From assembly GCF_001194135.2 (NCBI RefSeq), contig NC_068988.1, positions 41,729,418 to 41,793,131 on the forward strand: DNA of 63,714 bases. The letters run 5' to 3'. The position numbers were made by a program, and so were the translations under genes. Position 1 is the stretch's first letter, and each line of letters begins with the position of its first letter. The notes below the pieces were generated by a model. The model saw only the letters and a program-made list of their open reading frames with translations, was not told the origin of the DNA and did not search any database. Source of the stretch: Octopus bimaculoides (lineage: Eukaryota). Shown here in pieces: positions 1-63,527 of the stretch.

Positions 1-507
1 TATATATATATATATATATTTCTTTTTCTGGCTTAGTCGTAGAAAACAGAGCAGGTCCTTGACCCTTTTCATAGCTCCTCTGGTGTGTAGGAGAAAGCTA
101 TTTTCACATAATGTACCAAGGTTGAATGCATTCCAGAAACAGATTATTGTGTTAAGCCGGCGACAGAACACCATGAAGTGAGATCGAACGCGAAACGACT
201 TCGGTGCGAAGCGAAGGTCTTGACTGTGCAAATATGACCGCATCAACTCGTATTCATATACTTGTAATTATTATCAATAACATAGTTTTGTGTTGTACTA
301 CATATTCACTCATACAAGCATGCGCATACATATTCCCACATACTCTCACGCATATTATGTATGTGTATATGATTACATATATGTCAGCTTCAATTATTCG
401 TTGAAGTAAATTTGACCTTGACGATGTGTTCCCTATCCACTTGCTCGGTTACTCACCTCGTTATTGCTCTCACTCTCCTTATCTCTATGTTCTTTCTGTT
501 TCTACTT

Positions 508-511
508 CTCT

Positions 512-565
<54 letters not shown>
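508..565. repeat. (CT)n microsatellite within a ~150-nt pyrimidine-rich tract
   Basis: Direct: perfect CT run; the flanks are also pyrimidine-rich up to 625. Confidence 0.95.
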
Positions 566-569
<4 letters not shown>

Positions 570-592
570 CTCTTTTCTCTCTTTGCCACAAA

Positions 593-630
593 TCTAAATA
601 TACTTTTGTTTTGTTCTCTTTTCAGGTAAG
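593..630 (+). other. Candidate recursive splice site (3'SS immediately followed by 5'SS)
   Basis: Branch-like TCTAAAT at 593-599, then TACTTTTGTTTTGTTCTCTTTTCAG (AG at 624-625) followed directly by GTAAG (626-630). Could instead be a plain donor of a pyrimidine-rich exon. Confidence 0.5.
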
Positions 631-1178
631 AAAATCTTTAACGTATTCCTTCACCTACGGTAAATTATTTTGTTATATTTCACTCTACTTTCATACATTT
701 GATCCTATTTATTTCGCGTCATTAACAATAAAATGAGAAAAAGAGAGTAAAAAAGAGTACCATACAAAATAATTGTCGTTTTCACCCTTTTAATCGGCAT
801 ATTTATCTTATAGATATTGTTGCTATTGCTGTTGTTTTTGTCGTCACCGTTGTGAAAACACTGGTCAGCTCCGATGAAGAAGAGCTATGAATTAAAGCGT
901 CATACCTATATTCTTGTTTTTTTGTTGATATCTGATATTATATTATCTAATAAGTCAATTATCTTATTAGAGACAATAGAGTGTTTTGAAGAAAAATTGG
1001 AGTATTAATTCTTGTGATCCCTTAGGATCAAACCCAAAATTTGTTACAACAGTTCTAATAGAGATTTATAGTTTTGGTTCGTTTCCCCCTACTTCTACTA
1101 CTAATTCAGAAATGAAGAGGTGGATTATATCTGTTTGAATGAAATACGGTGCATATTTTAAAAAGTAATTATTAGTAA

Positions 1179-1612
1179 CAGAAGCAGTATTAATATCAAA
1201 AGGTCAAATTTATCCCCACTTAACAGTGCATGGTGTATTAGAACACAGAATACTGCGATAGTTACCATGAAAGAACCTCTCATAAAGGCTTTTGGTGCAT
1301 ACAAGCACTCTACTTTATACCGCGAGTGTGAGATAACTCCACTATCGCCGCTGCCGCTGCCGCCGCCGCGAGTAACGGATCACGTGATTTCGGCCTTATT
1401 TGGCTTTGTTAACAGTAGACATTCGACCGCTGGAAGTAGCAACGGTGTACACAAAATATCAGTGTTTATTCAAGCACTAGTTTCGTGAAAAGCCAGACGG
1501 CTTATTAAAAACTTAATTAATAGCACAGAAGCAGTATTAATACCAAAACTTAATATTATCCCCACTTAAAAGTGGATATTGTGTTATAACTCAAAATACT
1601 GCGATAGTTACC
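1179..1612. repeat. ~88-bp direct repeat pair (1179-1266, 1526-1612) flanking a GC-rich ~260-bp core
   Basis: Both copies begin CAGAAGCAGTATTAATA, contain TATCCCCACTTAA and end AATACTGCGATAGTTACC. Confidence 0.8.
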
Positions 1613-1774
1613 GACTAAGGAGAGATTAAAAACGAAATAAATACTTGTGACGTGATTTGAACATAGATCGGAAAAGTGCTTAAGCAAATATCACGTTACT
1701 AGTTCTACCACTGCAATGACCTCCTTTCCAATTGATTCATAATGAGTTTATCAATCACATCAACATCTTTCATG

Positions 1775-2082
1775 TCTGACTTGTTTCGGTTATTGGACTA
1801 CCACCATGCTAGGGCACCAACTAGAAGGGTCTGACCGAACACAAAGACACATATATACACATACATACATACATACATATACACACACAGAGACGCGCGC
1901 GCGCGCATACACATATCTTACGGGTTTCTTTCAGTTTCCGTCTGCCGAATCCACTAACAAGTCTTTGATAGGCCCGAAGCTAAAGTAGACGACAGTTGCC
2001 CAAGGTGCCAAGCAGTGGGACTGAACCCGGAATCATTTGGCTGAGAAGCAAACTTCTTACAACACAGCCAAGCCTGCACCTA
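1775..2082 (-). mobile_element. tRNA-derived SINE, family B (CORE-like CCTTGGGCAA motif), with internal microsatellite
   Basis: Reverse complement reads GCAGGCTTGGCTGTGTTGTAAGAAG...GGTTCAGTCCCACTG...CACCTTGGGCAAC. Related copies at ~28055, 35305, 61306, 63528. Confidence 0.85.
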
Positions 2083-2084
2083 TA

Positions 2085-2155
2085 TGTATGTGTGTGTGTA
2101 TGTGTGTGTGTGTGTGTGCGTGTGTGTGTGTGTATGTGTGTGCGTGTGCGTGTGT

Positions 2156-2208
<53 letters not shown>

Positions 2209-2225
2209 TGTGTGTGTGCGCGCGT
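2085..2225. repeat. (TG)n microsatellite
   Basis: Direct. Confidence 0.95.
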
Positions 2226-2577
2226 GCAGGTCATTGAAGTTCAGCTTGTAAGGTGGATACTGCAGTTATGAAGGATAGTTAGAAACGCAGTCATACGGTT
2301 TTAGAGTACTTTTGTTTGTTTAAGGATTAATGGAGGTATATGGTCCTTGGAATACAAAACAATTTAGTCGAACGTCTAACAGTGGACGAATCTTTTTAGG
2401 AAAAAAATAAGACAGGGTACTTACTATCGTTTGTGGTTGTCTGCGTCAACAAGATTGTAGTTGGATGTTAACAGAGCGCTTCAGAAGAGATGTGTCGAAG
2501 GGCGATGTAAGAGACTAACGTATGGTTGTTCAGAAGACGGAAATGTGTACACTGGTGTACCAAACAGGCCAAAGACC

Positions 2578-2628
2578 CATGCTCTAGAAAAGATTGCTCT
2601 AGAAAAGGCATGTTCTAGAAAGGGCATG
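2578..2628. repeat. Three-copy 15-16-bp tandem repeat (CATGCTCTAGAAAAG-like)
   Basis: GCTCTAGAAA at 2581 and 2596, GTTCTAGAAA at 2612. Confidence 0.75.
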
Positions 2629-2686
2629 TATTGACGATGATGGACGTTAATCTTATGGTCATAACCATAACAACAATGACGACGGC

Positions 2687-2743
<57 letters not shown>

Positions 2744-2772
2744 GATGATGATGATGGTGATGTTGATGATGC
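2687..2772. repeat. (GAT)n microsatellite
   Basis: Direct; it produces the poly-His ORF artefact on the minus strand. Confidence 0.95.
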
Positions 2773-3409
2773 ATCAATGAAATACTGCACTTAATGAAGT
2801 GTCATAATTAATCTTTCTGTATCAGTGTGATGAATATCAGCTTGTAATGTAATGTGGGCGTTAGGTGGAGCGAAGATACTATGCACAGCATTACATTACA
2901 AGTTGGCATCAGAAATTGCTAACATACCCAGCCTCTCAGTGAATAAATTGGTTTTTATTTTTTGGTTTTTTTCTTCAAAGTGATTCTCAGTAAACAATTT
3001 TGTAAACAATTGCTACCTCTCTGAAAATAACATGCACCAAACAGTGAGGGAAGGAGCATCTACCTGTCGCTTGATGTGCTAGAAGGAGCAGGTAAATGCC
3101 CTTAAATGCTGGTTAATGAAGTCTTGGATGAACTGCGTCTAAAAATTTGTGCGGGATACACACACACACATTATATAGGCTGTGCACGTGCACGTGCAAA
3201 CATGCTAGATCCACATAAGACCACTGCTTATGTATCTGGGAGAGTACTGCTACCATAGACACAACTATACTTACTACTTGACCTACATTAGAGCCGTCGT
3301 AATCATGTCATACGCTTTTTGCAGCGGGTTGATGACGCTACACGGAAAGTCTTCCCGATTAAGTGCGTGTCGTTCCATCGGATGAAGCTATAGCGTTACT
3401 TCATTCTGA

Positions 3410-5357: not shown

Positions 5358-5779
5358 CATATATATATATATATATATTCAAGGACACAGTGTATCATAC
5401 TTTATGGAAAAAACTAGCATGGAAAATAAAATATTTTCGAACAGAGACACAAGGTCAGGAATGGTAGAGTGAGGGGAACAGTCGATTATATTGACCCTCA
5501 TCGCCACCCTATCCAGAATTTGACAGGTACTTTATTTTATTGATCTCGGAATGATTAAAGTGAGAAATGTTGACCTTGGTAGAATCTGAACTTCAAATAG
5601 CAAACAAAAGCATACTCTATAACAAAGCTAAACTAACAATTCTATGCTCCAAAAGATAATGCCGCATACAGCTGAAGCAAAACGGAAGTATACCTAGTGG
5701 TGCAGTAGAAACTCGTATGCAGCTGCTGCAAAAAGAAAATAATAATAACGGTTTAATATTTTTGCACACGGCCAGCACT

Positions 5780-5962
5780 TTTTGAGGGCCAGTGGAAGTC
5801 AATTACATCGACGCCAGTACTTAACTGGTACTTATTTTATCGACCCCGAAAGGATGAAAGGCAAAGTCCACCTCGGCGGAATTTGAACTCAGAACGTAAA
5901 GACAGACGAAATACCGCTAAGCATATTGCCCAGCGTACTAACGATTCTGACAGCTCGCCGTC
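5780..5962 (-). mobile_element. tRNA-derived SINE, family A
   Basis: Reverse complement GACGGCGAGCTGTCAGAATCGTTAGTACGCTGGGC...GAGTTCAAATTCCGCCGAGGTGGACTTTGCCTTTCATCCTTTCGGGGTCGATAAAATAAGTACCAG; its 5' end abuts an (AAT)n run at 5963-6003. Confidence 0.9.
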
Positions 5963-9624: not shown

Positions 9625-10569
9625 AGGTCACAAGCCTTGACAATGCTCCTTCTCAAATAATGAACTCCGGCGGTCTGAAAACAGTGGTATGAGGAAAGAG
9701 CTAAAGTTTCGCTTAGATAGAAGACTAGTTATCTTCAATAAGAAATCCAGACCATTTCATGGATATTCCATAAAGGTAAATGGTGTGGACTGTGTAATAA
9801 GCGTGGGAATAAGTGGTGTTCTGTTGTCATAAGTAGAAGACAGAAAAAAGAGAATCAGATAGAGGAATACTAATTATATACAGACCGAAATTGTTTATAA
9901 AATCGGGGGGAAAAAAACACTGAAATATACGAATGAAGCTGAAATGCTAATAAAATGTTTAATATTTTTCTGGCTGTAAAATAAATTACAAGAATATTTG
10001 AAATTAATTGTAAAGGTATTGAAAAATGACTTACACAAATGGGTTGTTATATTAAAGATAGAAATAAATAAGTTGCATGCATAACGAAGATTTTTATTTA
10101 TTTTTATTAATTTCATTTTATTTCATTTCATTTATTTTAATATTTATTTTTTGGTTTGTAAACCTGTTTCTGACAGTCCCATGTTTAAAATATTTTATTG
10201 ACAACAGCACAACAGTAGAAGACAGAAAGAGAGCATTGTAAAGGAGTGACATTGATTGTATACAAACTGATTAAAGTCAAAAAGAAGATCTGGAAAGATA
10301 CGAATGCAGCCAAAGAATTCTCGAATCATTGAAATTAGTTGTAAAAATGATGTTTTAAATCAATTTATAGAAATGAGTTCTTATATTAATCATGAAAGTA
10401 AATTCCGTCCAATGATAAAAACATCACACGTTTAATTTTAAATAACGGAGTGTTAGAAACATGAATTCATATACCCACACAAAAATTGAATATATGCAAT
10501 ATATATTTTAATAGGCTTTGCCAGTTTTTATTTTTAAGAGTCTTTTCACCCCAGTCATCTTTATATTTC

Positions 10570-11455
10570 AATATATTATCAATCCAAGGCGGAGAGGTAA
10601 CAGAAACGTTAGCACGCCGGGCGAAATGCTTAGGTATTTCGTTTGTCTTCAAGCTCTGAGTTCAAATTCCGCCGAGGTCGACTTTACCGTTCATCCTTTC
10701 GGGGTCGATAAATTAAGTACCAGTTGCGTACTGGAGTCAATGTAATCGACTTAGTCCCTTTGTCTGTCTTTGTTTGTCCGCTTATGTTTAGCCCCTTTTG
10801 GGCAGTAAAGAATTAAATATATTATCAATCCAAGGCAGAGAGCTGGGCGAACTGCTTGGCGGTATTTCGTTTGTCTTTAGGTCGATAAATTAAGTACCAG
10901 TTGCGTACTGGGGTCGATCTAATCGACTGGTCTCCCTTCCCTAAAATTCGAGCCTTGTACCTAGAGTAGAAAAGAATATATTATCAATCTGATTAAGATG
11001 GCGAGCTGCTAGAATAGTTAGCACGCCACGCAAAATGTTTAGCAGCATTTAGTCCGCCTTCAAGTTTTGAGCCCAAATTCCACCGAAGTCGACATAACCT
11101 TCCATCCTTTGGAGGTTGATAAAATAAGTGCTATATGAACACTGGGACCGATGTACTCGACTTACACCGTTCCTTAAAGTTACTGGCCTTGTGCCAAAAT
11201 TTGAAATTAATATAACAATCCATTGTAAGGCGGCGAGTTGGTAAAATCGCTAGCACGCCGATCAAAATACTATGCGCCATTTCGGCCATTTTCACGTTCA
11301 GCATTCAACTTCCACCAAGGTCAACTTTGCCTTTCATCATTTTGGGGTCGATAAACAAAGTATCAGTTGGGCACCGAAGCCGATGTGATCCACTTAACCC
11401 CTCTTCCGAAATTGCTGGGCTTTTGCCAAATTTGAAACCAATATATAATCAATCC
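10570..11455 (+). mobile_element. Head-to-tail array of four family-A SINEs separated by five copies of a ~16-bp spacer
   Basis: SINEs at ~10586-10815, 10832-10974, 10995-11208, 11227-11439. Spacer AATATATTATCAATCC at 10570 and 10816; variants at 10975, 11209, 11440. Confidence 0.9.
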
Positions 11456-19690: not shown

Positions 19691-21559
19691 GTTTTCTACT
19701 CAGTTTCTCTTATATCTATGTTACACAAAGCTCAAAAGCGCTTGTCGGAGATGCTCTGGTGTGCGATTGATCCTGAGATGTCATAAGTGTAAAACAAATT
19801 TCTTAACCACTCAGCAACGACTGCATCAAGTTATGTATGTGTGTGCATGTGTGTGAGTGAGTGTGTGAGAGTGTGTGTGTCTGAATATGTGCGTGTGTAT
19901 GTGTGCAGGTACATGCAGGTACATATGTATATTATTATATTTAACATACATTAATGCAGGCCTATATACACATAAACGCAAATTCGTACATGTACACAAC
20001 AATGTATATATTACATAAATATATGCACGAATATGTATAGAAATGCATCTCCTTATATACTCTTGATTGCCAATATCTGCCACAACCACCAACACCACCA
20101 CTATCATCACCACCACTGCTATTTCTAGCATCACCTGTATCACTACCACCATGTTGACGACCAAGAACTTCTAATGATGCCGCCACCACTATCAGACATA
20201 AAATAAAAAACTAGCTAAAAAGTAATGGAAGAATTTAAACTAAGTAAAAATATAGATCAACAACCGTAATGTCTCAAAAAAAATTAATACAAAAATACAA
20301 CTGCCTCCTCCTCTCCATAAAGAAATTACAATGGCTGGTTTACCGGAAATGAAAAGTTGAACGGAAATGGCTAGATTTAATGATAGTTGGACTAAAATGA
20401 ATGATGTATAAAATCACATCACATCACACAAACACACAAACACACACAGACGTGCATACATCCATTCACATGGATCCATGTTTGCATGTGTGTATGTATG
20501 CCTGAATGTAAGTATGTATGTATGTTTGTATGTATCTTTCTATATACCTATGTGTGTATTTTATGGCAAGAGATAATGGTCGTAGATTGGTTTCGTTAAG
20601 TCCTTACACAGCAGGAGCGCTCCAATCGATGAATTTCACAGGATAAAACGACAGAAATGCAGACAACAAACCGGCGATGAAAGGATCGTATCCTATGTCA
20701 CCGTAGACAACAGTTATTTCTGATTTAGTGGAATTTTAAAATGCTAATTTTCATATCATGTCATTTTCTTCGTAGATAATGTCAGGATATTACAGCGTGT
20801 ATATATATATATATATATATATNNNNNNNNNNNNNNNNNNNNNNNNNNNNNNNNNNNNNNNNNNNNNNNNNNNNNNNNNNNNNNNNNNNNNNNNNNNNNN
20901 NNNNNNNNNNNNNNNNNNNNNNNNNNNNNNNNNNNNNNNNNNNNNNNNNNNNNNNNNNNNNNNNNNNNNNNNNNNNNNNNNNNNNNNNNNNNNNNNNNNN
21001 NNNNNNNNNNNNNNNNNNNNNNNNNNNNNNNNNNNNNNNNNNNNNNNNNNNNNNNNNNNNNNNNNNNNNNNNNNNNNNNNNNNNNNNNNNNNNNNNNNNN
21101 NNNNNNNNNNNNNNNNNNNNNNNNNNNNNNNNNNNNNNNNNNNNNNNNNNNNNNNNNNNNNNNNNNNNNNNNNNNNNNNNNNNNNNNNNNNNNNNNNNNN
21201 NNNNNNNNNNNNNNNNNNNNNNNNNNNNNNNNNNNNNNNNNNNNNNNNNNNNNNNNNNNNNNNNNNNNNNNNNNNNNNNNNNNNNNNNNNNNNNNNNNNN
21301 NNNNNNNNNNNNNNNNNNNNNNNNNNNNNNNNNNNNNNNNNNNNNNNNNNNNNNNNNNNNNNNNNNNNNNNNNNNNNNNNNNNNNNNNNNNNNNNNNNNN
21401 NNNNNNNNNNNNNNNNNNNNNNNNNNNNNNNNNNNNNNNNNNNNNNNNNNNNNNNNNNNNNNNNNNNNNNNNNNNNNNNNNNNNNNNNNNNNNNNNNNNN
21501 NNNNNNNNNNNNNATATACATACATACATACATATATCTGTGTGTACGTATGTATGGGT

Positions 21560-26874: not shown

Positions 26875-27600
26875 TTATTTGATTTGATTTGATCTAGTTT
26901 CAGCTCGTGAGCTGTGGCCATGCTGGGGCACCGCCATTTGGTGTTGATACATAATTTTACTTCACTAATTCATTTTAGAAATTGACATTTGGTGCATGAG
27001 TGAGTTTAATGCTGCTGCCCTCATCTGCACCTCCTACTGTGAAGTTGGTTCATCTGGGACACTTCACAGTAAGAGATCTAGTTTCGTTTTGAAAACACCT
27101 ACATCCACCCCATGCAGGTCTCTCATGTACTTCGGGAGGATATTAAAGAGCTGTGGTCCCCCAAAGTCCAGGCTGTTGCAATATCTTATCCTATACCTTG
27201 ATGGCAAATTTGGAGTCCTTGGTACAATGCAGGGGCGCCCTGTTCTAGTGTTAGTGAAACTCTCGATGCCAAAGTTTTGGACAAGTCCCTCCAGAATCTT
27301 CCAGATGTATATTATGGCATATCTTTCTCACCTACGCTCTAAGGAGTAGATTTTTAATCTCTTGGGTCTTTCCCAGTAGCTTATATGCTGCAAAGGGGAT
27401 ATCTTTTCGTGTAGCTTCGTTGGATTGTCTCAAGATCTATAATTAATTTGAAACTGGTTGGTGACAATAGCCGGGAGTAATAGTCAAAGTGGCTTAGGGC
27501 AAATGTCCTCAAGAGGACTATCATGGTTTACCGATCTCTTGTTCTAAAAGTTCTAAGAATCCATCCGGTTAGCCGCCGGCATTTCATTGCGAACATAGCA
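26875..27600 (-). mobile_element. CR1/L2-group LINE 3' end with tail and (ATCAA)n terminus
   Basis: Minus strand: GWILRTFRTR, YWERPKRLKIYSLERR*ERYAIIYIWKILEGLV, GPQLFNILP, VFKTKLDLLL*SVPDEP; tail GGCGGTGCCCCAGCATGGCCACAGC...GAAACTAGATCAAATCAAATC. Confidence 0.9.
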
Positions 27601-30609: not shown

Positions 30610-30900
30610 TAGGCCCTCCGTCGCTTACGATGACGAGTGTTCCAGTTGATCCGATCGACGGAAGGGCCTGCTCGTGAAAGTGATTGAACACTTCACAGAC
30701 ACGTTTGCTGGGTCAAGAGAGATTCAGCGTGACACGGAATGTTACGAGAGTGGCCCTTTGAATGTTTGCCAGCTGAGTGAACTGGAGCAACATGAAATAA
30801 ACTCTCTTGCTCAAGGACACAACGTACCACCGGGGATCGAACTCACGACCTTACGATCGCGAGCCGACTGTCCCTAACCACTAAGCCACGCGTCTTCACT
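30610..30900 (-). mobile_element. tRNA-derived SINE, family C
   Basis: Minus head GTGAAGACGCGTGGCTTAGTGGTTAGGG...GAGTTCGATCCCCGG; 3' end ...ACTGGAACACTCGTCATCGTAAGCGACGGAG followed by (ACC)/(AAC) repeats. Confidence 0.85.
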
Positions 30901-34242: not shown

Positions 34243-35209
34243 AGAATTACATAGAAATGACTTGAAATACTAAAGACGAAATTTATTCAGTAAAATCGCT
34301 ATTGGCTTCAACCACGGCTTCCGGACGACTTCGGAAACTGCTGCAACTCCTCTGGACGGTCCCCTCGTTTAAGTTGGTGAATGCTGACATAATCCTTGCC
34401 TTCAGTTCATCTTTGGTGTTACAAAGAGCTTTGTAGATCTCTCACTCAACTGCGCCCGCACATAAGAATGAAGGAGCTCGCAGTGTGAGTAGTTAGGTGG
34501 CCAGATGATAGGAGTAATGTGGTCTCACAAATTGTCTGACAGCCGTGACTGAGTCCTCCTGCTCGTGTGGGATGGTGCAGAGTCCTGTTGTCAGACGTAA
34601 GGTCTTCCAGCAGCTACCCTCTTGACCCAGAACAGTACTACCTCCTCCAGGCGCTAGATGTAGGCCTCCGTCTTGAGTCTGAGGCCGTGTGGGAAGATGA
34701 ATGGAGGCATAATGTCGCCATCATTGGCGATCACTCCAAACACCATGATGTTGGTTGAATGTTTGATTTTTATGATTCTCGGTATTTTGGGGATACGGCA
34801 AGCCAACAGTTGTTCTGTATGTTTATCATCTGACCCTCGCAGAATTTTTTCTCGTTTGAGAAAAACAAAAGAATGTTCAGTTTGAGGGGATGCTTGCGTT
34901 TGTTCAAAAGCGTCGTAGCGCGGTCTTTCCTCTTGTCCCTGGTGCCTTGGGATAAAAACTGGTCCTTTCTCATCTTGTATGATGAATACCGGATGTCTTC
35001 ATGCACTACCTACCTAATAAGAAACTCAGATACTCCCATGTCCCTCGCGATAGACCTGATTAACTTAGAGGGATCGTTGTTAATAACGACCTGGATCTCA
35101 CTAACAAATTAAGGAGTTCTTTTCTTATCAGAACGATCAGAGTGAGTTTTCCGAGCTACCATTTTGTATTGAAAATATAAAATGGCGATAATTTATCCAT
35201 CGCACCCTG
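34241..35209 (-). mobile_element. Degenerate Tc1/mariner transposon, DD37D (maT)-like transposase
   Basis: Minus strand begins TA|CAGGGTGCGATGGATAAATTATCGCC. Peptides IRSIARDMGVS, FFSNEKKF, IMVFGVI, QQDSAPSHTS, WPPNYSHCELLHSY; 37 residues separate the D of QDS from the expected third D. Left TIR not seen (a TA run sits there). Confidence 0.88.
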
Positions 35210-36819: not shown

Positions 36820-36868
36820 TACTAAATGTTTTAATGTTCTTTTTCTTCTCTTTCTATTTTAGGTAAGT
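36820..36868 (+). other. Candidate recursive splice site (3'SS immediately followed by 5'SS)
   Basis: TACTAAA branch-like motif at 36820-26, tract TTTTAATGTTCTTTTTCTTCTCTTTCTATTTT, AG at 36861-62, then GTAAGT at 36863-68. Confidence 0.6.
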
Positions 36869-36999
36869 TATATGCTTTTGTCTAAATACGATTCTGCGCT
36901 GCTGAGAATGGGAATAGACAACTAAATGATGAAATCATGTACTATAAAAAAGGAAGAAAATCAAGCAGGTATTTTCACGACGATCATCATTGTTATGTC

Positions 37000-41498: not shown

Positions 41499-43289
41499 GA
41501 TGGAATAATGAAAAGATTCAACGAGATGGAAGAAAAAGATATGTATATAAGTAGATAAATCAATAAACTACAGTAAGGAAGTAAATAAATAGAAGTTTAC
41601 TTCCAAATATCAATATTTTCAACATGGCTAAGGAGGGTGGAGTCATAAAAAAAAAACAGAAGCAAAATTCGATTCTACCTTTCAGAAACGGAGCGACTCT
41701 AGCTTCCTATTTCCGCAGTCGGTAAAATAGGTGCAAGTTTTATAATGGGACTCAATTCAATAAACTATAGCCTTTCTGAATAAGTCTCTAACCTTGTGCT
41801 TATGTCAGAAACGATTGTTATTAATTATTGTTAAATGTTATTGTAGGATATACATACTGACCAAGTGACTGCCTGATACACTAACTGAAATCTAAAACAG
41901 CAGATTAAATACTCTGTTGCGTATATTTCTATATCTTTACATTCTGAGTTCAAATCCTGCAAAGCATGGCTTTGCCTTTCGACTCTTCAAAGTTGAGAAT
42001 ATAAATACCGATATATATATATATGTATATAAATTAAACTGGATTCAAGCAACTATAATACTCTCGTACAAATTTCTATCTTTTTATCAGTATAAGAAAT
42101 GAAGTGGAAACTCGTTACATGGCCAGTGAACAGGTGAGCTTTTCATATGAAGAACTCCCGTCAAGCGATTCGGATTGGAGGGGCATTGTTTTAAAGATGA
42201 AGTTTCGTCCCCGTTTTAACTGCTTCTAGTAGCTATATACACTGGCTTGTGTAGTCCCTATTCTAAAGACATCCGGGAGATGGGAGGGGAGGGGAAGGGT
42301 AGTTGTCTAATACATTGGGAAACTCAACTTTTTTATAGTGTCTCCTTTTTAAGTATGTTAAAGTCTCTGGTGAAGAACAACTGTTATATGAAGCAGACCA
42401 ACCGACTGTCTGTCATGAAGCCGCCCATCAACACACTCCAGGCTCTAACCCACAGTCATGTTCTACTCATCTTTTATAGAGTTATTGCAGTAGCCTCTGT
42501 TCCTTCAATCTGGCTTGCCTCATAAGACATCCATTGCGGAACTCTTGGTTTATTTTTTTCTTTTCCTCTCTTTTATACTATTTCTACCGCGCCGAGCCTC
42601 CATTACCAACTGATCCCTAAACTCCCATCCCGAAACATCAGTTCTATGAAATCCAAATCTATCCCTGTCTCTGTTTCTCCTTGGCGGCATTTGTATTGCA
42701 GCTGTTCATGAGAAACGTCGACCACGTTGATTTATCAATCTCGGAAGATCTGTAAGGCAATGGATAAGGCCCGCTCTTGCAGATCAAGCCATTAAGAAAT
42801 GCATCCATAAAGAATCTTCTTCTGTATTTCATGTGGCTCCGATTACTAAGAGTGGGACATTGTTTATTATTGAATATCTAGTTTCTGTATTACGCCGAGC
42901 AAAAGAAAATGACAGCTCAATTTTTAGCTACATGATCCTTATTTGTGAATTTTAATTATACAACAGAACACATAATTGGTATTGTGCTAAAATAATTAAG
43001 GGTTATACATCATAGACTGGACATGAGTTGTCTCTAGCAACGATGTCGGGAGAGTATTATTAGAAATTTAGTTTGTTAAACAATATACATGCAATGGTAA
43101 TACAGATCATCCACGTTCTCTCCTCTACTGCCAATCTTTATACGGTTGCATGGGGGAAAACATGAGGACGTCGCTACACGGGCACTGGACATATTAGAAA
43201 TACTAGCCAAATCACACGCATCCCACCGCATTTTTAATGGACACATTGGTTAATGCAACCACACATACACACACACACGCACACACACA

Positions 43290-44774: not shown

Positions 44775-45400
44775 CTTTTATTATTTTACACGTTTCAGCC
44801 CTAAGGCTGTGACCATGCTAGGGCACCGCCAGTGTAATCACCTTTTCAATGGCCAATCTTATGTGATTGTTGTTCGGTGCAGGAGGGAGTTCGACACTGC
44901 TGCCCTCTTTTGAGTCACCCGCCTTGATATTGATTCATCTGGGACCTTGCATAGCAGGAGACCAAGCTGTTTCTTGTCCCACTCCATGAAGATTCTGCAG
45001 ATGTTTTAGCAAGATGTTAAATAGCCGTAGGTCCTTGAATCCCAAGCTATTGTAGTAAATGATCCTCACACTAGATGGGATAACTGGGACCTTTAAAACA
45101 GTGCAGGGACGTCCAGTTCGGGGCCTAGTATAGCTCTCGATACCAAAGCCCCTCCAGGACCTTCCATACCTCTCCCGTCCTTCGCTCCAGAAAGTAGGGT
45201 CGTAGTTATTTCAGTCTCTCCCAGTAGCTCAGTTGTTCCATTGATGTGATCTTCCTTGTATAACATTGTTGAGCTGCCTCAAATTCCGTTATTAATCTGA
45301 TATTGCCTGAGTCGAGAACAACGTCGTTAGATCTTAGTATAAATCCATAAAGCTGAAAATCATAACTATGTTCCGAGCCAAGTGACTCAAGTCCTTGATT
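44775..45400 (-). mobile_element. CR1/L2-group LINE 3' end, related to 26875-27600
   Basis: Minus strand EFEAAQQCYTRKITSMEQLSYWERLK, GPTAI*HLAK / VPDES region; tail GGCGGTGCCCTAGCATGGTCACAGCC. Confidence 0.8.
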
Positions 45401-46365
45401 AGTACTTTATGTCACCGATTTATATTTTATTTTACATTATTATAGTTATTTATTCAGGCTACGAGCTGGCACCATTGGACAGCTTCTAATCACAAGTTTG
45501 GACTTCACCATAAGAACAATAACAACAAAAGCCCACAGTAAAATCATCATCATTTTTTAGCGATCCGATATTACTGACACTTCAGCACATTTCTTATGTT
45601 TCATCGACCGCAATCTACCGTACTGGCTATTCTGATACTCACTAACAACCAACAGGGAAACAGACATTTTCCGGAAGCCGGAAACGAACCAAATTTCTCA
45701 GATTTGCAGCCGTCATGCATTATTGATTATACTGTCAGAGGAGGCTCTTGTTACAGTACCACCATAATTGTTTCGCACTTTGTATATGTATACATACATA
45801 CACGCATACATGGATGTGTGTATAATGCATACATATATTGGCCAAGATGAATATTCCTATCTGATGGTAAGTCTAGTTATAACTAAATATAAGCCAGTCT
45901 GGCAACGTCTCTGTCAATTGTTTGGGTGTTTCTCTCATATTTTACTTAGGAAGGAGTTAAAACATTATCCTAAGATTGCACCTGTAGCCCGGAATGTGTA
46001 ACCAGAGTATATAATATCCAGATAAAATGTATGGATCTCAAACTATTTGTATGCCATAAATCAGTCATCCATCATGTATTGTTTGCTGCACCGCTCCTCA
46101 TAGCAGTTGTTGGATCATCCAGTGGGACACCAGACAGAATCTGTGACATTGCATCATAAAAGACTCCGCTAAAATCATCCCAGGATCAACAGGTAGCATT
46201 AAACCGGATAATGGGTTGTCACTACTGAAGACCAGCACCCAGTGCAGTTTCTGTCAATCCCATTTGATTGACCGGACAACTATCAGATGAAACTTGAATT
46301 GGCTATCATCTCTTGGTATAACAAACACATCCACGCGCGCATATAGGCATACATACATACATACA

Positions 46366-46399
<34 letters not shown>

Positions 46400-46402
46400 C
46401 AT

Positions 46403-46720
46403 ACCTGGCACTCCGTCCGTTACGACCACGTGTGTTCCAGTTAATCCGATCAACAGAAAAACCTACCTGTGAAATTAAGGTCGAAGTAACTGAGCACTAC
46501 AATGACACACGTACACTTGACGTGGTACTCAGGGAAATTTAGCGTGACACAGGTTGTGACAAAGCTGGACCTTTGAATTACAGGTACAGCTCTTTTTTAT
46601 CAACTGGGTGGACCGGAGCAGCATGAAATAAAATGTCTTGTTCAAGGACACATGGCACCGCATGGAATCGAAATCACGACCTAATGATCGAATACGCTAA
46701 TCACTAAGTTACGCACTTTC
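46403..46720 (-). mobile_element. Family-C SINE
   Basis: TGGCACTCCGTCCGTTACGAC...CCAGTTAATCCGATCAAC...GTTCAAGGACAC...ATCGAAATCACGACC; same head type as 30610-30900. Confidence 0.8.
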
Positions 46721-47703: not shown

Positions 47704-48453
47704 GGGTGTTCCAAAAGTCACTGATGGGTTTCAATTTTTAATAACTTCCTTAACATCAACTTTTCATTCAATATAAAGGACATAATGGAAATTAATATGC
47801 ACAAGTCAAATTTGGCAACACCACTCCATCACATTTGAAAAATTACATCGCTTAATTGGAGGCCATTTTCAGCTTCTCACGCCCGTGCTCGTTCCAACAC
47901 TTGTGCCATAACACCCTCAAGAACTTTAGACCCTACTTCTCTGATTTCTCTATTGATGTTCTTCAGTTGCACCAGGGTCTCCGGTTTGTTGATGTAAAGC
48001 CTCTCTTTCGGGCATCCCCACAAGAACAAGTTCGAGCTAGTCAGGTCTGGAGAACGTGAAGGCCAGTTGACATTGCCTTGCAGGAGGTTATTCTCTCTAC
48101 AAAGCACTGGCGCAAATAGATCTCAGTGATGGATACCTGAAAGAGAGGATTTACGTCAACAAAGAGAGACCTTGGTGCAACTGAAGGAGAACATCAATAG
48201 AGAAGTGAGGTCTGAAATTCTTGAGGGTGTTATGGTGCAAGGTTTGGAAAGAGCACGGGTGTGTGAAGCCGAGGATGGCTGCCATTAAGCGATGTCATTT
48301 TTCATATGTGATGTAGTGAAGTTGCAAACTTTGACTGGCGCACATTACTTTCCATTATGTCCTGTATATTTTATCAAAATGTCATGCATTTATTTGTACA
48401 GTTAAGGAAGTTAATAAAAGTTGAAACCCATCAGTAACTTTTGGGACACCTTG
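47702..48453. mobile_element. Foldback (palindromic) non-autonomous Tc1/mariner derivative
   Basis: Arms 47702-48017 and 48131-48453 are inverted copies of a transposase 3' end plus TIR (TAGGGTGTTCCAAAAGTCACTGATGGGTTTCAA / TTGAAACCCATCAGTAACTTTTGGGACACCTTG). Minus strand encodes WPSRSPDLTSSNLFLWGCPKERLYINKP. Confidence 0.9.
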
Positions 48454-49004
48454 CATATATCGGGCACAATTGAAAATGTTGCGTAACTATGCTATTTGTA
48501 TTTTTTTTATAGAAACTTTATGTTTTGCTTTCATAGAATTTCTAGGAAATATTATCAGATAAAACAGGGATAGTAACAAAAAGCAGAAACAATTAACTGC
48601 TGGTTGTTGAGGTAAAGCAACAAATGTTCTCACTTATAATGTATAGTAGTTGACGTCAATTTGTCTCTCCAGTGTTTCGTTACCCACAATCCTCTGTTCA
48701 CGTTAACCAGTTTATAGAGGTGATATAGTAAAAGAACTTGCTAACAGCAATCTTTTTTACGTATAATTCTTTTTGAGATGTCAATAAAATGTCAAGTGAA
48801 TCCTTGAAAATTCTCTTTACTTTCATCCCAACTAGATGTAACATGGTTTCTAGATTAGTTTGTATGATATTCTAGAAGCATTGTGATGTATTACATCGAA
48901 AAGAAATTTAAATGTCATAACAATTCGACTTTTAATAAAAGATGTTTTATCTTCATTCATCTCTTAATAATATTTCCATTTTGAAAAACCATTATCAAAT
49001 AATC

Positions 49005-49350
49005 GTGGCACTCCGACGCTTACGACGACGAGGATTCCAGTTGATCCGACCAACGGAACAGCCTGCTCGTGAAATTAACGTGTAAATGGCTGAGCACTCC
49101 ACAGGCACGTCTACCTTTAACGTAGTTTTCGAGGAGATTCAGCGTGAGACAAGGCTGGCTCTTTGAAATACAGGTACAACAGAAACAGGAAGAAAGAGTG
49201 AGAGAAAGTTGTGGTGAACTCTGCCGGAGCCTTATGGAGCTTTAGGTGTTTTCGCTCAATAAAAACTCACAACGGCCGGTCTGGGAATCGAAACCGCGAT
49301 CGCACAACCGCGAGTCCACTGCCCTAGCCACTGGGCCATTGCGCCTTCAC
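49005..49350 (-). mobile_element. SINE with family-C 3' half but a different tRNA-like head and body
   Basis: The 3' half matches 30610 and 46403; the head reads GTGAAGGCGCAATGGCCCAGTGGCTAGGGCAGTGGACTCGCGG...GGTTTCGATTCCCAGACC. Confidence 0.8.
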
Positions 49351-49914: not shown

Positions 49915-50577
49915 GGTGGTGAGTTGGTAGAACCATTACGGTGCTGAACAAGATACTCAGCGGTATTTCATCCATCTTTGCATTCCGACTTTAAATTCCA
50001 TCGATGTCGACTTCATCTCTCTTCCTTTCAGTGTAACTAAGATAAATACCAGCTGAGAACTGGATTCCATGTAATCGAGTATCCACCGCCTCCACTAACC
50101 AAAATGTCGGCCCTTGTGTATATAGAAAGAATTATTACAGAGGCGAATTGACAAAATCGTTACCACGTCGGACAAAATGTTCAGCGTCATTTCTTCCGGC
50201 TTTACGGTCTGAATTCAAATTCCGCTGAGGTCGATTTTGCCTTTTATTGTTTTAAGGTCGATAAAATAACTACCAGTTGAATACTGGGTTTGATGTAATC
50301 GACTTACTCTCTTCCGCATAAATTCCTGGTCATGTGCCTACAGTAGACAGGATTATTAAGGCTGCAAACTGGCAGAATCGTTACCAGCATCTCTTCCGGC
50401 TTTACATTCTGAGTTCAAATACCACCTGGGTTGACTTCGCCTTTCAGTCTTTTGAAGGCGACTTTGCCGTTCATGTTTTCGAGCTCGATAATATAAGTAC
50501 TGGGGTGAATGTAATCCATTGTCTGCTTCTCTCCTCAAACTCGCTGGCCTCGTCCCAAAATTAGACAGGATTATTTA
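49915..50577 (+). mobile_element. Three head-to-tail diverged family-A SINEs
   Basis: Copies start at ~49915, 50140, 50358 and each ends TAGA(A/C)AG(A/G)ATTATT. Confidence 0.8.
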
Positions 50578-52309: not shown

Positions 52310-52427
52310 TGCTGACTGGTCCTCTTGTCTCCTGTCCAGCATTCTGATCCATGAAAGGACTTGACATTACAAATGTCATAAATGTCGCGCTTGCGGATGA
52401 TGACATAATCCAGCAAGTGCCAAACTT
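52310..52427 (-). mobile_element. RTE-clade LINE endonuclease C-terminal fragment (inverted)
   Basis: KVWHLLDYVIIRKRDIYDICNVKSFHGSECWTGDKR (cf. HWHLIDYVIVRxRD...GAECWTDHR). Confidence 0.85.
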
Positions 52428-52865
52428 TTAGCTGATATCTTGAGTATTGAGGCAGTGTTGCACAAGCACTGGTTACGTTGGACTGGACACCTTATTAGAA
52501 TGAAGGATAGCAGGATTCCTAAGCAGATGCTATATGGAGAACTTGTAAATAGAGGGAGACTCTAGCGGAAACCAATGCGGCGATTTAAGGACTGTGTCAA
52601 GTCCTCATTAAAGGCCTGCGATATACAGGACACTGACTGGGAGAGCAATGCCTGTCATCGCCACAGATGGAGGAAGCAGGTTAAGGAGGGGATCGACACT
52701 TTTGGGAGAGCACGTATCCAGCAGGAAGAACTTAAGCGAGCTGCGCGAAAGCGCACGGCTCGTATAGTGAATGGGGAAAGCTTAATCTGCAATGTTTGCA
52801 GTCGTGTATGCTTGTCAAGAGCAGGGCTCATTAGCCACCAACGGAGCCGCAAATGCAAAATATAA
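52428..52865 (+). mobile_element. RTE-clade LINE ORF 3' end with C2H2-like zinc finger
   Basis: LRWTGHLIRMKDSRIPKQMLYGEL...RKPMRRFKDCVKSSLK...RWRKQV...CNVCSRVCLSRAGLISHQR; one in-frame stop. Confidence 0.92.
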
Positions 52866-61455: not shown

Positions 61456-62677
61456 TATATATACATATATAGCAACAACCAGAATGCTTCAGCATACAAG
61501 AATATATTGATCAGTCTTCGCACAGCTCACAGCTGAACAAGAAATGTAAAATTTGACAATGTTCCAGTTCTGTTATTGATTTTGTAAACGTCCAAAGCAT
61601 TTACGTTAATTTGAAGAACATCCTCAATATAAAAGAGCAGAAATCTCTGTGGATTAGAAACAACAGGAAAGACTGTAACTATCCCAAATAATCTACGGCT
61701 TCATCATCTTTCAATGATATCATGATTATTAGTTATTTATTTTATTCAATATATATTGATTATTCAAGAATATAATTATGATTATTTCTGTGTCATGGTT
61801 ATTATATATATATATANNNNNNNNNNNNNNNNNNNNNNNNNNNNNNNNNNNNNNNNNNNNNNNNNNNNNNNNNNNNNNNNNNNNNNNNNNNNNNNNNNNN
61901 NNNNNNNNNNNNNNNNNNNNNNNNNNNNNNNNNNNNNNNNNNNNNNNNNNNNNNNNNNNNNNNNNNNNNNNNNNNNNNNNNNNNNNNNNNNNNNNNNNNN
62001 NNNNNNNNNNNNNNNNNNNNNNNNNNNNNNNNNNNNNNNNNNNNNNNNNNNNNNNNNNNNNNNNNNNNNNNNNNNNNNNNNNNNNNNNNNNNNNNNNNNN
62101 NNNNNNNNNNNNNNNNNNNNNNNNNNNNNNNNNNNNNNNNNNNNNNNNNNNNNNNNNNNNNNNNNNNNNNNNNNNNNNNNNNNNNNNNNNNNNNNNNNNN
62201 NNNNNNNNNNNNNNNNNNNNNNNNNNNNNNNNNNNNNNNNNNNNNNNNNNNNNNNNNNNNNNNNNNNNNNNNNNNNNNNNNNNNNNNNNNNNNNNNNNNN
62301 NNNNNNNNNNNNNNNNNNNNNNNNNNNNNNNNNNNNNNNNNNNNNNNNNNNNNNNNNNNNNNNNNNNNNNNNNNNNNNNNNNNNNNNNNNNNNNNNNNNN
62401 NNNNNNNNNNNNNNNNNNNNNNNNNNNNNNNNNNNNNNNNNNNNNNNNNNNNNNNNNNNNNNNNNNNNNNNNNNNNNNNNNNNNNNNNNNNNNNNNNNNN
62501 NNNNNNNNNNNNNNNNNNNNNNNNNNNNNNNNNNNNNNNNNNNNNNNNNNNNNNNNNAATCACTATTCTATTTTATATTCTAGTTTTATCTTCTCCATGT
62601 CATCTATTTTGCTCATTATTATTCAGCTTAATTGAACCATCTTCGATATTCGTTCAATGCAGCAGTATTTCGTGAAT

Positions 62678-63274
62678 AAAGGCGGCGAGCTGGCAGAAAC
62701 GTTAGCACGTCGGGCGAATTGCCTAGCGGTATTTCGTCTGCCACTGCGTTCTGAGTTCAAATACCGCCGAGGTCGACTTTGCCTTTCATCCTTTCGGGGT
62801 CGATAGATTAAGTACCAGTTACGCACTGGGGTCGATATAATTGATTTAATCCGTTTGTCTGTCCTTGTTTGTCCCAGTCTGTGTGTAGCCCCTTGTGGGC
62901 AGTAAAGAAATAGGTATTTCATTTGCCGTTACGTTCTGAGTTCAAATTCCGCCGAGGTCGACTTTGCCTTTCATCTTTTCAGGGTCGATAAATTAAGTAC
63001 CAGTTACGTACTGGGATCGATGTAATCAACTTAATCAATTTGTCTGTCCTTGTTCGTCCTCTCTATGTTTAGCCCCTTGTGAGCAATAAAGAAATACGAA
63101 ACATTAGCACGCTGAGCGAAATGCTTAGCGGTATTTCGTTTGTCTTTACGTTCTGAGTTCAAATTCTGCCGAGGTTGACTTTGCTTTTTATCCTTTCGGG
63201 ATCGATAAATTAAGTACCAGTTGCGTGGCCTCCTCCCACAAAATTTCAAGCCTTGTGCCTAGAATAGAAAAGAA
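62678..63274 (+). mobile_element. Trimeric family-A SINE flanked by a single 12-bp TSD
   Basis: TATTTCGTGAAT at 62666-62677 and 63275-63286; units start at ~62678, 62913, 63097. Confidence 0.88.
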
Positions 63275-63527
63275 TATTTCGTGAATCAACATTCTTGGAA
63301 CAAGCGAAGGTCGGCAGTATTTAAAAAAAATTATCGAAAATTCGGGTAATGCAAAAACAAGTACTGCTGTTACATGTGTTTGTGTGTGTGTGTGTGTGCG
63401 TGCGCGCGCGTGCATGAAATGTATATATTTATATATAAATTCATGCAGGTATATGTATATACATTCATACACACATATAAATACATATATATATATATAT
63501 ATATATGCACACACACACACATATAAG

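What the first reader, a model, noticed from the sequence alone, without database searches (positions are those of the whole stretch)
593..665. Recursive-splicing-like zero-length exon #1, with a possible 34-nt cryptic RS-exon
Seen: branch-like TCTAAAT ~28 nt upstream, a long pyrimidine tract, and CAG joined directly to GTAAG (625/626). A second weak donor ACG|GTAAAT follows at 659/660. Established: Drosophila ratchet points and vertebrate RS sites in very long introns have this 3'SS/5'SS fusion and often a short downstream cryptic exon. Inference: this is an intermediate splice point of a long + strand intron. I know of no description of recursive splicing in cephalopods.
Basis: partly seen in the sequence, partly recalled or inferred. 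Interest (0 to 1): 0.7.

Follow-up and report, generated by a model that had tools for sequence, protein, structure and literature searches.

The report
Candidate recursive splice site in octopus DNA
A strong "end-of-intron joined to start-of-intron" signal sits at 625/626, and with a twin 36 kb downstream it scores far above chance, so it is a credible first candidate for stepwise (recursive) intron removal in a cephalopod; no transcript, gene or conservation evidence could be obtained.

Summary
The sequence reads TCTAAAT (593-599), then an 18/20 pyrimidine tract (603-622), then CAG(623-625)|GTAAGA(626-631). A weaker donor, ACG|GTAAAT, follows at 659/660.

I scored all 333 AGGT tetranucleotides on both strands with a generic acceptor+donor matrix. 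This site scores 12.1 bits. A second + strand site at 36862/36863 (TTTTCTTCTCTTTCTATTTTAG|GTAAGT) scores 13.3. The next best is 6.9, which is also the typical maximum in shuffled or reversed sequence. None of 600 locally shuffled windows had two sites of 12 bits or more, and 2 of 150 order-5 Markov windows did.

The site also has finer traits of Drosophila ratchet points:
- TT at -5/-6
- A at -28 to -30
- GTAAGA
- a weaker downstream donor that would give an out-of-frame 34-nt cryptic exon

The window shows no recognisable exon, Pfam domain or Rfam RNA, and no strand asymmetry, so the host gene and its strand are unknown. RNA evidence is one ambiguous fragment (about 623-707); the read tools then became unavailable. 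Conservation could not be tested.

Verdict: a credible recursive-splice-site candidate (about 0.5), not demonstrated. If real, it is a new member of a known kind.

The parts
507..565 (+). (TC)n microsatellite, about 30 units; part of a roughly 160-nt pyrimidine-rich stretch (about 465-625) upstream of the site. Context only, not the tract itself.
   Evidence: (TRF)
593..599 (+). Branch-point-like TCTAAAT. A596-A598 lie at -30 to -28 from the acceptor G. It matches the yUnAy consensus at 4 of 5 positions.
   Evidence: Drosophila recursive branch points lie at -36 to -21 with a peak at -30 (bioRxiv 10.1101/006163).
603..622 (+). Polypyrimidine tract CTTTTGTTTTGTTCTCTTTT (18/20 Y), with TT at -5/-6 and no AG between branch motif and acceptor.
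   Evidence: acceptor score 8.8 bits; only 10 of about 6,500 AG in the window reach 8.5 or more
623..631 (+). Core CAG|GTAAGA: a 3' splice site joined directly to a 5' splice site (junction 625/626). This is the putative zero-length exon, or ratchet point.
   Evidence: donor score 7.3 bits including the CAG
626..659 (+). Putative 34-nt cryptic RS-exon (3n+1, so frame-shifting if included; a stop in one frame).
660..665 (+). Weaker downstream donor ACG|GTAAAT (2.3 bits against 7.3 for the regenerated donor).
   Evidence: As good a donor 20-110 nt downstream occurs at 12.8% of positions.
36833..36868 (+). Second, stronger site of the same kind: TTAAT (A at -30/-29), Y tract, TAG(36860-36862)|GTAAGT(36863-36868), TT at -5/-6.
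   Evidence: Its flanks are not homologous to site 1.
36863..36974 (+). Putative 106-nt cryptic exon of site 2 (3n+1), ending at the weak donor CAG|GTATTT (36968/36969).

Best explanation
Position 625/626 is a recursive splice site (ratchet point) on the + strand, and 36862/36863 is a second one. Both would lie inside one very long intron that covers most or all of this window.

Inferred mechanism, by analogy with Drosophila and vertebrates:
1. U2AF/U2 recognise the branch A near -30, the U-rich tract and CAG. Exon definition is helped by the weak donor 34 nt downstream.
2. The upstream exon is spliced to G626, which removes the first intron segment as a lariat.
3. This rebuilds a strong 5' splice site (exon end + GTAAGA). 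It outcompetes the weak GTAAAT donor, so the 34-nt cryptic exon is removed together with the next segment.
4. Splicing then runs to the next ratchet point (36862) or to the real downstream exon. Nothing of the site remains in the mRNA.

Shown here: the motif, its fine features and its statistical outlier status. Inferred: transcription on the + strand, intronic location and actual use.
For: 1. Exact juxtaposed CAG|GTAAGA with an 18/20 Y tract.
2. The two + strand sites score 12.1 and 13.3 bits against 6.9 for the next of 333 AGGT. Nulls give 0.008-0.053 such sites per window. None of 600 block-shuffled windows and 2 of 150 Markov-5 windows had two or more. Reversed sequence reaches 6.8.
3. The flanks of the two sites are unrelated, so they are not copies of one repeat.
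4. Several features of Drosophila ratchet points are present: TT at -5/-6 (99.5% of ratchet points), branch A near -30, the GTAAGA of the Ubx sites, and segment sizes of 2.6-64 kb against 36.2 kb here (bioRxiv 10.1101/006163). Recursive 3' splice sites are also very strong (PMC6110457).
5. The downstream donor is weaker than the regenerated one, and the cryptic exons of 34 and 106 nt are both out of frame, as described for cryptic RS-exons (PMC8605326).
6. No exon candidate, Pfam domain or Rfam RNA was found in 63.7 kb, which is compatible with one huge intron.
7. One RNA fragment in run X27 covers about 623-707. Its first mate lies on the - strand, which means + strand RNA in a dUTP library. 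Both mates continue into unlike sequence, as a junction read onto 626 would.
Against: - There is no evidence that the window is transcribed on the + strand or lies in a gene. PAS counts are 75 against 74, GC skew is +0.02 and TA skew is 0.
- RNA depth was close to nil: 9 reads in three runs at about 6% sampling.
- The one suggestive fragment fits a short insert read into adapter equally well, and I inferred its boundaries from binned depth only.
- In X24 the few reads at 914-1558 have the opposite orientation.
- Conservation was not tested.
- In human, only about 3,000 of 10.6 million intronic AGGT, and of 1.67 million with decent splice scores, have transcript support (bioRxiv 10.64898/2026.09.10.750672). 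A motif alone predicts poorly.
- The site lies in a pyrimidine-rich region next to a (TC)n microsatellite.
- The scoring matrix is generic, not octopus-trained, and the thresholds were chosen after the fact.
- The number of windows screened by the first stage is unknown.
Confidence: 0.5

Rival explanations
1. Chance juxtaposition. A T-rich tract in a pyrimidine-rich, microsatellite-flanked region happens to be followed by AGGTAAG. The site is not used, or lies in untranscribed or antisense DNA.
For: The (TC)30 repeat and a roughly 160-nt Y-rich stretch lie just upstream. A genome of this size would hold on the order of a thousand or more chance sites of 12 bits or more at 0.015-0.05 per 64 kb (the genome size is my own knowledge). 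No transcript, gene or strand-bias evidence was found. Motif-only predictive value in human is very low (bioRxiv 10.64898/2026.09.10.750672). The site was picked out by eye, after the fact.
Against: Two such sites on one strand in one window was seen in none of 600 block-shuffled windows and 2 of 150 Markov-5 windows. The rest of the AGGT score distribution matches the null exactly, with a maximum near 6.9. The extra ratchet-point traits (TT at -5/-6, A at -30, AG-free zone, weaker downstream donor) were not part of the selection.
Confidence: 0.3
2. An ordinary 3' splice site of an expressed exon that begins at 626. This could be a 34-nt microexon (626-659), a poison or non-coding exon, or a dual-specific AG|GT site used as an acceptor in some transcripts and as a donor in others. 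Strictly, an RS-exon that ends up in mature RNA is a variant of recursive splicing.
For: The acceptor is strong and a usable donor lies 34 nt downstream. The X27 fragment covers 623-707, downstream of the site only. Expressed RS-exons and dual-specific sites are known (PMC8605326; PMC10809524).
Against: An unselected exon would rarely start with GTAAG, and two independent sites do. The 34-nt and 106-nt exons are out of frame and have no coding features. Pfam found nothing. No RNA contig of run X14 lay on 570-1830.
Confidence: 0.12
3. An ordinary 5' splice site. The pyrimidine-rich sequence upstream of 625, including the (TC)n repeat, would be the end of an exon such as a non-coding first exon, and CAG|GTAAGA its donor.
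For: CAG|GTAAGA is a near-consensus donor (7.3 bits).
Against: There was no read on 570-612 in any of three RNA runs, while the only nearby fragment lies downstream of 625. This reading does not explain the acceptor-type features (TT at -5/-6, branch A at -30, AG-free zone) or the twin site at 36862, whose upstream side is AT-rich non-coding sequence.
Confidence: 0.04

Closest known systems
Drosophila intronic ratchet points (zero-nucleotide recursive splice sites; Ubx, kuz, Bx, luna; Hatton 1998, Burnette 2005, Duff 2015, Joseph 2018, Pai 2018)
   Same: - juxtaposed strong 3'SS|5'SS, (Y)n-CAG|GTAAGA
- TT at -5/-6
- branch A near -30
- very strong acceptor
- a short cryptic exon with a weaker donor, out of frame
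- a second site 36 kb away, within the range of Drosophila segment sizes
- no exon nearby
   Different: The taxon is a cephalopod mollusc, where recursive splicing has not been described. Junction reads, sawtooth coverage, lariats, deep conservation and a known long host intron define the fly sites; none of these is available here.
Vertebrate recursive splice sites and RS-exons in long neuronal genes (Sibley 2015; Blazquez 2018; Zhang 2018; Hoppe 2023; Bass and Salzberg 2026 preprint)
   Same: An AG|GT core with a Y at -3, a downstream 5' splice site that defines an RS-exon, and competition between the regenerated and the downstream donor. Octopus, like vertebrates, has many very long genes (my own knowledge).
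   Different: [quoted passage not shown] The motif here is closer to the stringent fly consensus. No expression data are available.
Dual-specific AG|GT splice sites (PMC10809524)
   Same: One AGGT that can serve as either an acceptor or a donor.
   Different: Those are used in alternative mature isoforms, for example polyubiquitin repeats. Nothing here suggests a coding repeat architecture.

Membership tests
Zero-nucleotide recursive splice site (ratchet point) | [quoted passage not shown] | tested here: met
   CTTTTGTTTTGTTCTCTTTTCAG|GTAAGA. Acceptor 8.8 bits and intronic donor 3.3 bits; rank 2 of 333 AGGT.
Zero-nucleotide recursive splice site (ratchet point) | TT at -5/-6 of the acceptor (99.5% of Drosophila ratchet points; bioRxiv 10.1101/006163) | tested here: met
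   t620 and t621. Also true of site 2.
Zero-nucleotide recursive splice site (ratchet point) | Branch point, usually A, at -36 to -21 with a peak at -30, and no intervening AG | tested here: inconclusive
   A596-598 lie at -30 to -28 within CTAAA (4 of 5 of yUnAy), and the zone is AG-free. This is sequence only; no lariat read was available.
Zero-nucleotide recursive splice site (ratchet point) | Lies on the sense strand of a long intron (above about 11 kb in flies) | tested here: inconclusive
   No exon candidate or domain on either strand in 63.7 kb. No strand asymmetry. Host gene and strand unknown.
Zero-nucleotide recursive splice site (ratchet point) | Split reads from the upstream exon to the GT, sawtooth coverage, and recursive lariats | tested here: inconclusive
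   One X27 fragment at about 623-707, partial on both mates. No joint was listed, since three reads are needed. The read tools became unavailable afterwards.
Zero-nucleotide recursive splice site (ratchet point) | Core much more conserved than other intronic AGGT across related species | not testable with these tools
   No other cephalopod genome is in the searchable collections.
Zero-nucleotide recursive splice site (ratchet point) | Short cryptic RS-exon (about 50 nt) closed by a donor weaker than the regenerated one, poorly coding and out of frame (PMC8605326) | tested here: met
   A 34-nt exon with donor ACG|GTAAAT at 2.3 bits against 7.3 bits; length 3n+1. The chance of as good a donor in range is 0.13.
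Zero-nucleotide recursive splice site (ratchet point) | Motif occurrence in excess of chance on one strand | tested here: met
   Two sites of 12 bits or more on the + strand and none on the - strand. Nulls give 0.008-0.053 per window. None of 600 block shuffles had two or more.
Expressed RS-exon or cassette microexon | The exon is present in mature mRNA isoforms | tested here: inconclusive
   No X14 RNA contig on 570-1830 and almost no reads. Depth was too low to exclude it.

The most novel reading that the evidence does not exclude
These are the first recursive splice sites seen in a lophotrochozoan. Two fly-type ratchet points 36 kb apart would divide an intron of more than 60 kb in an octopus gene. 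That would imply that zero-length-exon recursive splicing, with the same U2AF-type TT(-5/-6) acceptor and GTAAG donor grammar, is ancestral to bilaterians or arose again in large cephalopod genes.
Probability: 0.4. Interest if true: 0.6.

Novelty: new member of a known kind. Interest (0 to 1): 0.45.

Why it matters
Recursive splicing is documented in insects and vertebrates only. Cephalopods have very large genomes with very long, often neuronal, genes, and unusual RNA biology. Whether they remove giant introns stepwise is unknown, and no paper in the searched library addresses it.

A validated pair of ratchet points with the fly-type sequence grammar would do three things:
- extend the mechanism to a third major animal clade
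- give a motif model for a genome-wide scan in cephalopods
- bear on whether recursive splicing is an ancient solution to long introns

As it stands, this is a well-founded, cheaply testable candidate, not a discovery.

Tried and rejected
1. Read mapping
- The run on 570-1830 gave only 9 reads.

2. Gene context
- Pfam on the 9 longest ORFs found nothing.
- Pfam on 271 high-complexity stop-to-stop ORFs of 45 aa or more, on both strands, gave only noise (best E 0.0026).
- Acceptor-ORF-donor scans found no credible exon.
- Rfam at gathering threshold found nothing.
- The strand-asymmetry test (PAS, GC and TA skew) was flat.

3. Homology search. I prepared a six-frame pseudo-protein query for the search for homologous proteins but did not run it. 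No ORF looked exon-like, and hits from transposable elements would probably swamp the list, so the cost was not justified.

4. Repeat origin. Self-BLAST and pairwise alignment show that the two sites are neither copies of a repeat nor of each other.

5. My by-eye labels 'mariner-like' and 'LINE tail' for some ORFs were not confirmed by Pfam.

6. My first, looser null (at least 16/20 Y plus AGGTRAG) gave 0.33 expected against 2 observed, P about 0.04. The matrix-based nulls replaced it.

7. One paper search was badly framed and gave nothing useful.

Full report
**The observation**

The sequence is exactly as described.
- TCTAAAT occupies 593-599.
- A 20-nt tract, CTTTTGTTTTGTTCTCTTTT (603-622), has 18 pyrimidines.
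- CAG ends at 625 and GTAAGA starts at 626.
- ACG|GTAAAT lies at 659/660.
- No AG lies between the branch-like motif and the acceptor AG.

The tract is 37 nt downstream of a (TC)30 microsatellite at 507-565. It sits in a roughly 160-nt pyrimidine-rich stretch but is not itself the repeat.

**Is it more than chance?**

The window holds 13 AGGTRAG on both strands, which is no more than a first-order model predicts (10.4). Only two of them have at least 16/20 pyrimidines upstream, and both are on the + strand, at 624 and 36861.

I then scored all 333 AGGT with a generic metazoan matrix. It covers the Y tract at -20 to -5, positions -4 and -3, and donor positions +3 to +6. The frequencies come from my own knowledge. 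Site 36862 scores 13.3 bits and site 625 scores 12.1. The next best is 6.9.

| Null model | Expected sites of 12 bits or more per window | Windows with two or more |
|---|---|---|
| Independence of acceptor and donor scores | 0.008 | not applicable |
| Order-5 Markov | 0.053 | 2 of 150 |
| Shuffles within 12-, 25- or 50-nt blocks (keep local pyrimidine richness) | 0.015-0.03 | 0 of 600 |

In the block shuffles the median maximum was 6.6-6.9. The reversed, uncomplemented window reaches 6.8. So the real score distribution looks like the null plus two outliers, both on the + strand.

Self-BLAST and a pairwise alignment show that the two sites are not copies of one repeat.

Three caveats apply. 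The matrix is not octopus-trained. The thresholds were set after seeing the sites. I do not know how many windows the first stage screened.

**Finer anatomy**

Duff et al. (bioRxiv 10.1101/006163) report several traits of Drosophila ratchet points:
- 99.5% have TT at -5/-6.
- Recursive branch points lie at -36 to -21, with a peak at -30.
- The Ubx recursive sites carry GTAAGA.
- Recursive introns are 11-133 kb long and are removed in segments of 2.6-64 kb.

Here t620 and t621 are TT, and A596-598 lie at -30 to -28. The donor is GTAAGA. The twin site is 36.2 kb away. It also has TT at -5/-6, and a TTAAT with A at -30/-29. Pai et al. (PMC6110457) note that recursive 3' splice sites are unusually strong, which also holds here.

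Joseph et al. (PMC8605326) describe a short, poorly conserved, usually out-of-frame cryptic RS-exon closed by a donor weaker than the regenerated one. Here the next donor is 34 nt downstream and scores 2.3 bits against 7.3. At site 2 it is 106 nt downstream and scores 1.9 against 6.5. Both exon lengths are 3n+1. As good a donor 20-110 nt downstream occurs at only 12.8% of positions. That is mild support, not proof.

**Context**

The window is AT-rich and full of microsatellites, dispersed SINE-like repeats and 13 assembly gaps. I found nothing that places it in a gene:
- Pfam found no family in 271 high-complexity ORFs of 45 aa or more on either strand.
- Acceptor-ORF-donor scans found no credible exon.
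- Rfam found no family.
- There is no strand asymmetry: AATAAA 75 against 74, GC skew +0.02, TA skew 0.

This fits a giant intron, but it fits intergenic DNA equally well. The host gene, if there is one, and its strand remain unknown.

**RNA evidence**

Three 2026 RNA runs of the species were sampled at about 6% each. Together they put 9 reads on 570-1830, and RNA contigs of run X14 put none there.

One X27 fragment is of interest. From the binned depths, both mates cover roughly 623-707. Both continue for at least 20 nt into sequence unlike the window. The first mate lies on the - strand, which means + strand RNA in the usual dUTP design. A read joining an upstream exon ending in ...CAG to G626 would look like this. 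So would an 85-nt insert read through into adapter. No read covered 570-612, which argues weakly against an exon ending at 625.

I did not pursue them by other routes. Conservation in other octopods could not be tested with the collections on hand.

**Interpretation**

The most parsimonious functional reading of two unrelated loci that each join a top-percentile acceptor directly to GTAAG is a recursive splice site.
- An ordinary exon would rarely begin with GTAAG, and two independent sites do.
- An ordinary exon would rarely end in a 20-nt U-rich tract plus branch motif, and both sites have one.

The main rival is chance. A large genome must hold many chance matches at 0.015-0.05 per 64 kb. 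In human only a tiny fraction of intronic AGGT with decent splice scores show transcript support (bioRxiv 10.64898/2026.09.10.750672).

| Reading | Confidence |
|---|---|
| Recursive splice site | about 0.5 |
| Chance juxtaposition | 0.3 |
| Acceptor of an expressed or dual-specific exon | 0.12 |
| Donor of an upstream pyrimidine-rich exon | 0.04 |

**Comparison and novelty**

The site works like, and in sequence resembles, a Drosophila-type intronic ratchet point. The motif-level membership criteria are met. The criteria that actually define the class were inconclusive or untestable here: a sense-strand long intron, junction reads, sawtooth coverage, lariat reads and conservation.

The searched library holds no paper on recursive splicing in cephalopods or molluscs. 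If real, this is a new member of a known kind in a new clade. That is interesting but not astonishing, and it can be tested cheaply with total RNA-seq and a genome alignment.

Noticed in passing
window 36833-36974 (+): A second, stronger recursive-splice-like site: TTTTCTTCTCTTTCTATTTTAG|GTAAGT at 36862/36863 (13.3 bits, the best of 333 AGGT). It has TTAAT at -30/-29, and a weak donor CAG|GTATTT 106 nt downstream.
   Followed up: partly
window 1178-1266 and 1525-1612 (+): A direct repeat of about 90 nt (81-85% identity, spacing 346 nt) flanks a GC-rich segment (about 1320-1400, CCGCTGCCGCTGCCGCCGCCGCG). The few X24 RNA reads on 914-1558 lie here, with orientation opposite to the X27 fragment.
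   Followed up: no
window about 623-707: A single X27 RNA fragment whose two mates both match only this stretch and then run into unlike sequence. It is either a junction read onto 626 or a short insert with adapter. Unexplained.
   Followed up: partly
window 5749-5883, 10465-11448, 20405-20596, 27067-27327, 30716-30850, 41896-42099, 44938-45210, 46257-46696, 48939-49082, 50046-50225, 62626-63281: Dispersed repeat families, seen as ORF-level paralogues (34-78% identity over 26-66 aa). They are probably SINE-type or other interspersed elements. SINE-like sequence also lies at about 30-240 and 1900-2080 by eye.
   Followed up: no
window 52404-52862 (+); 34496-35009 (-); 47880-48122 (-): ORF fragments that by eye resemble a retroelement C-terminal tail with a C2H2 finger and mariner-type transposase remnants. 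Pfam gives only a sub-threshold zf-met hit (E 0.0026) and nothing for the others.
   Followed up: partly
window 11872-62557 (13 N runs of 10-741 nt): Assembly gaps or masked stretches. With simple repeats they make about 9% of the window unusable.
   Followed up: no
window 1-3000: RNA-labelled run X14 holds 24% of the sampled 31-mers of 1-3000 but nothing on 570-1830. So about 700 nt within 1-569 and/or 1831-3000 is present in RNA contigs. It is either repeat-derived or a real transcribed piece. Not resolved.
   Followed up: no
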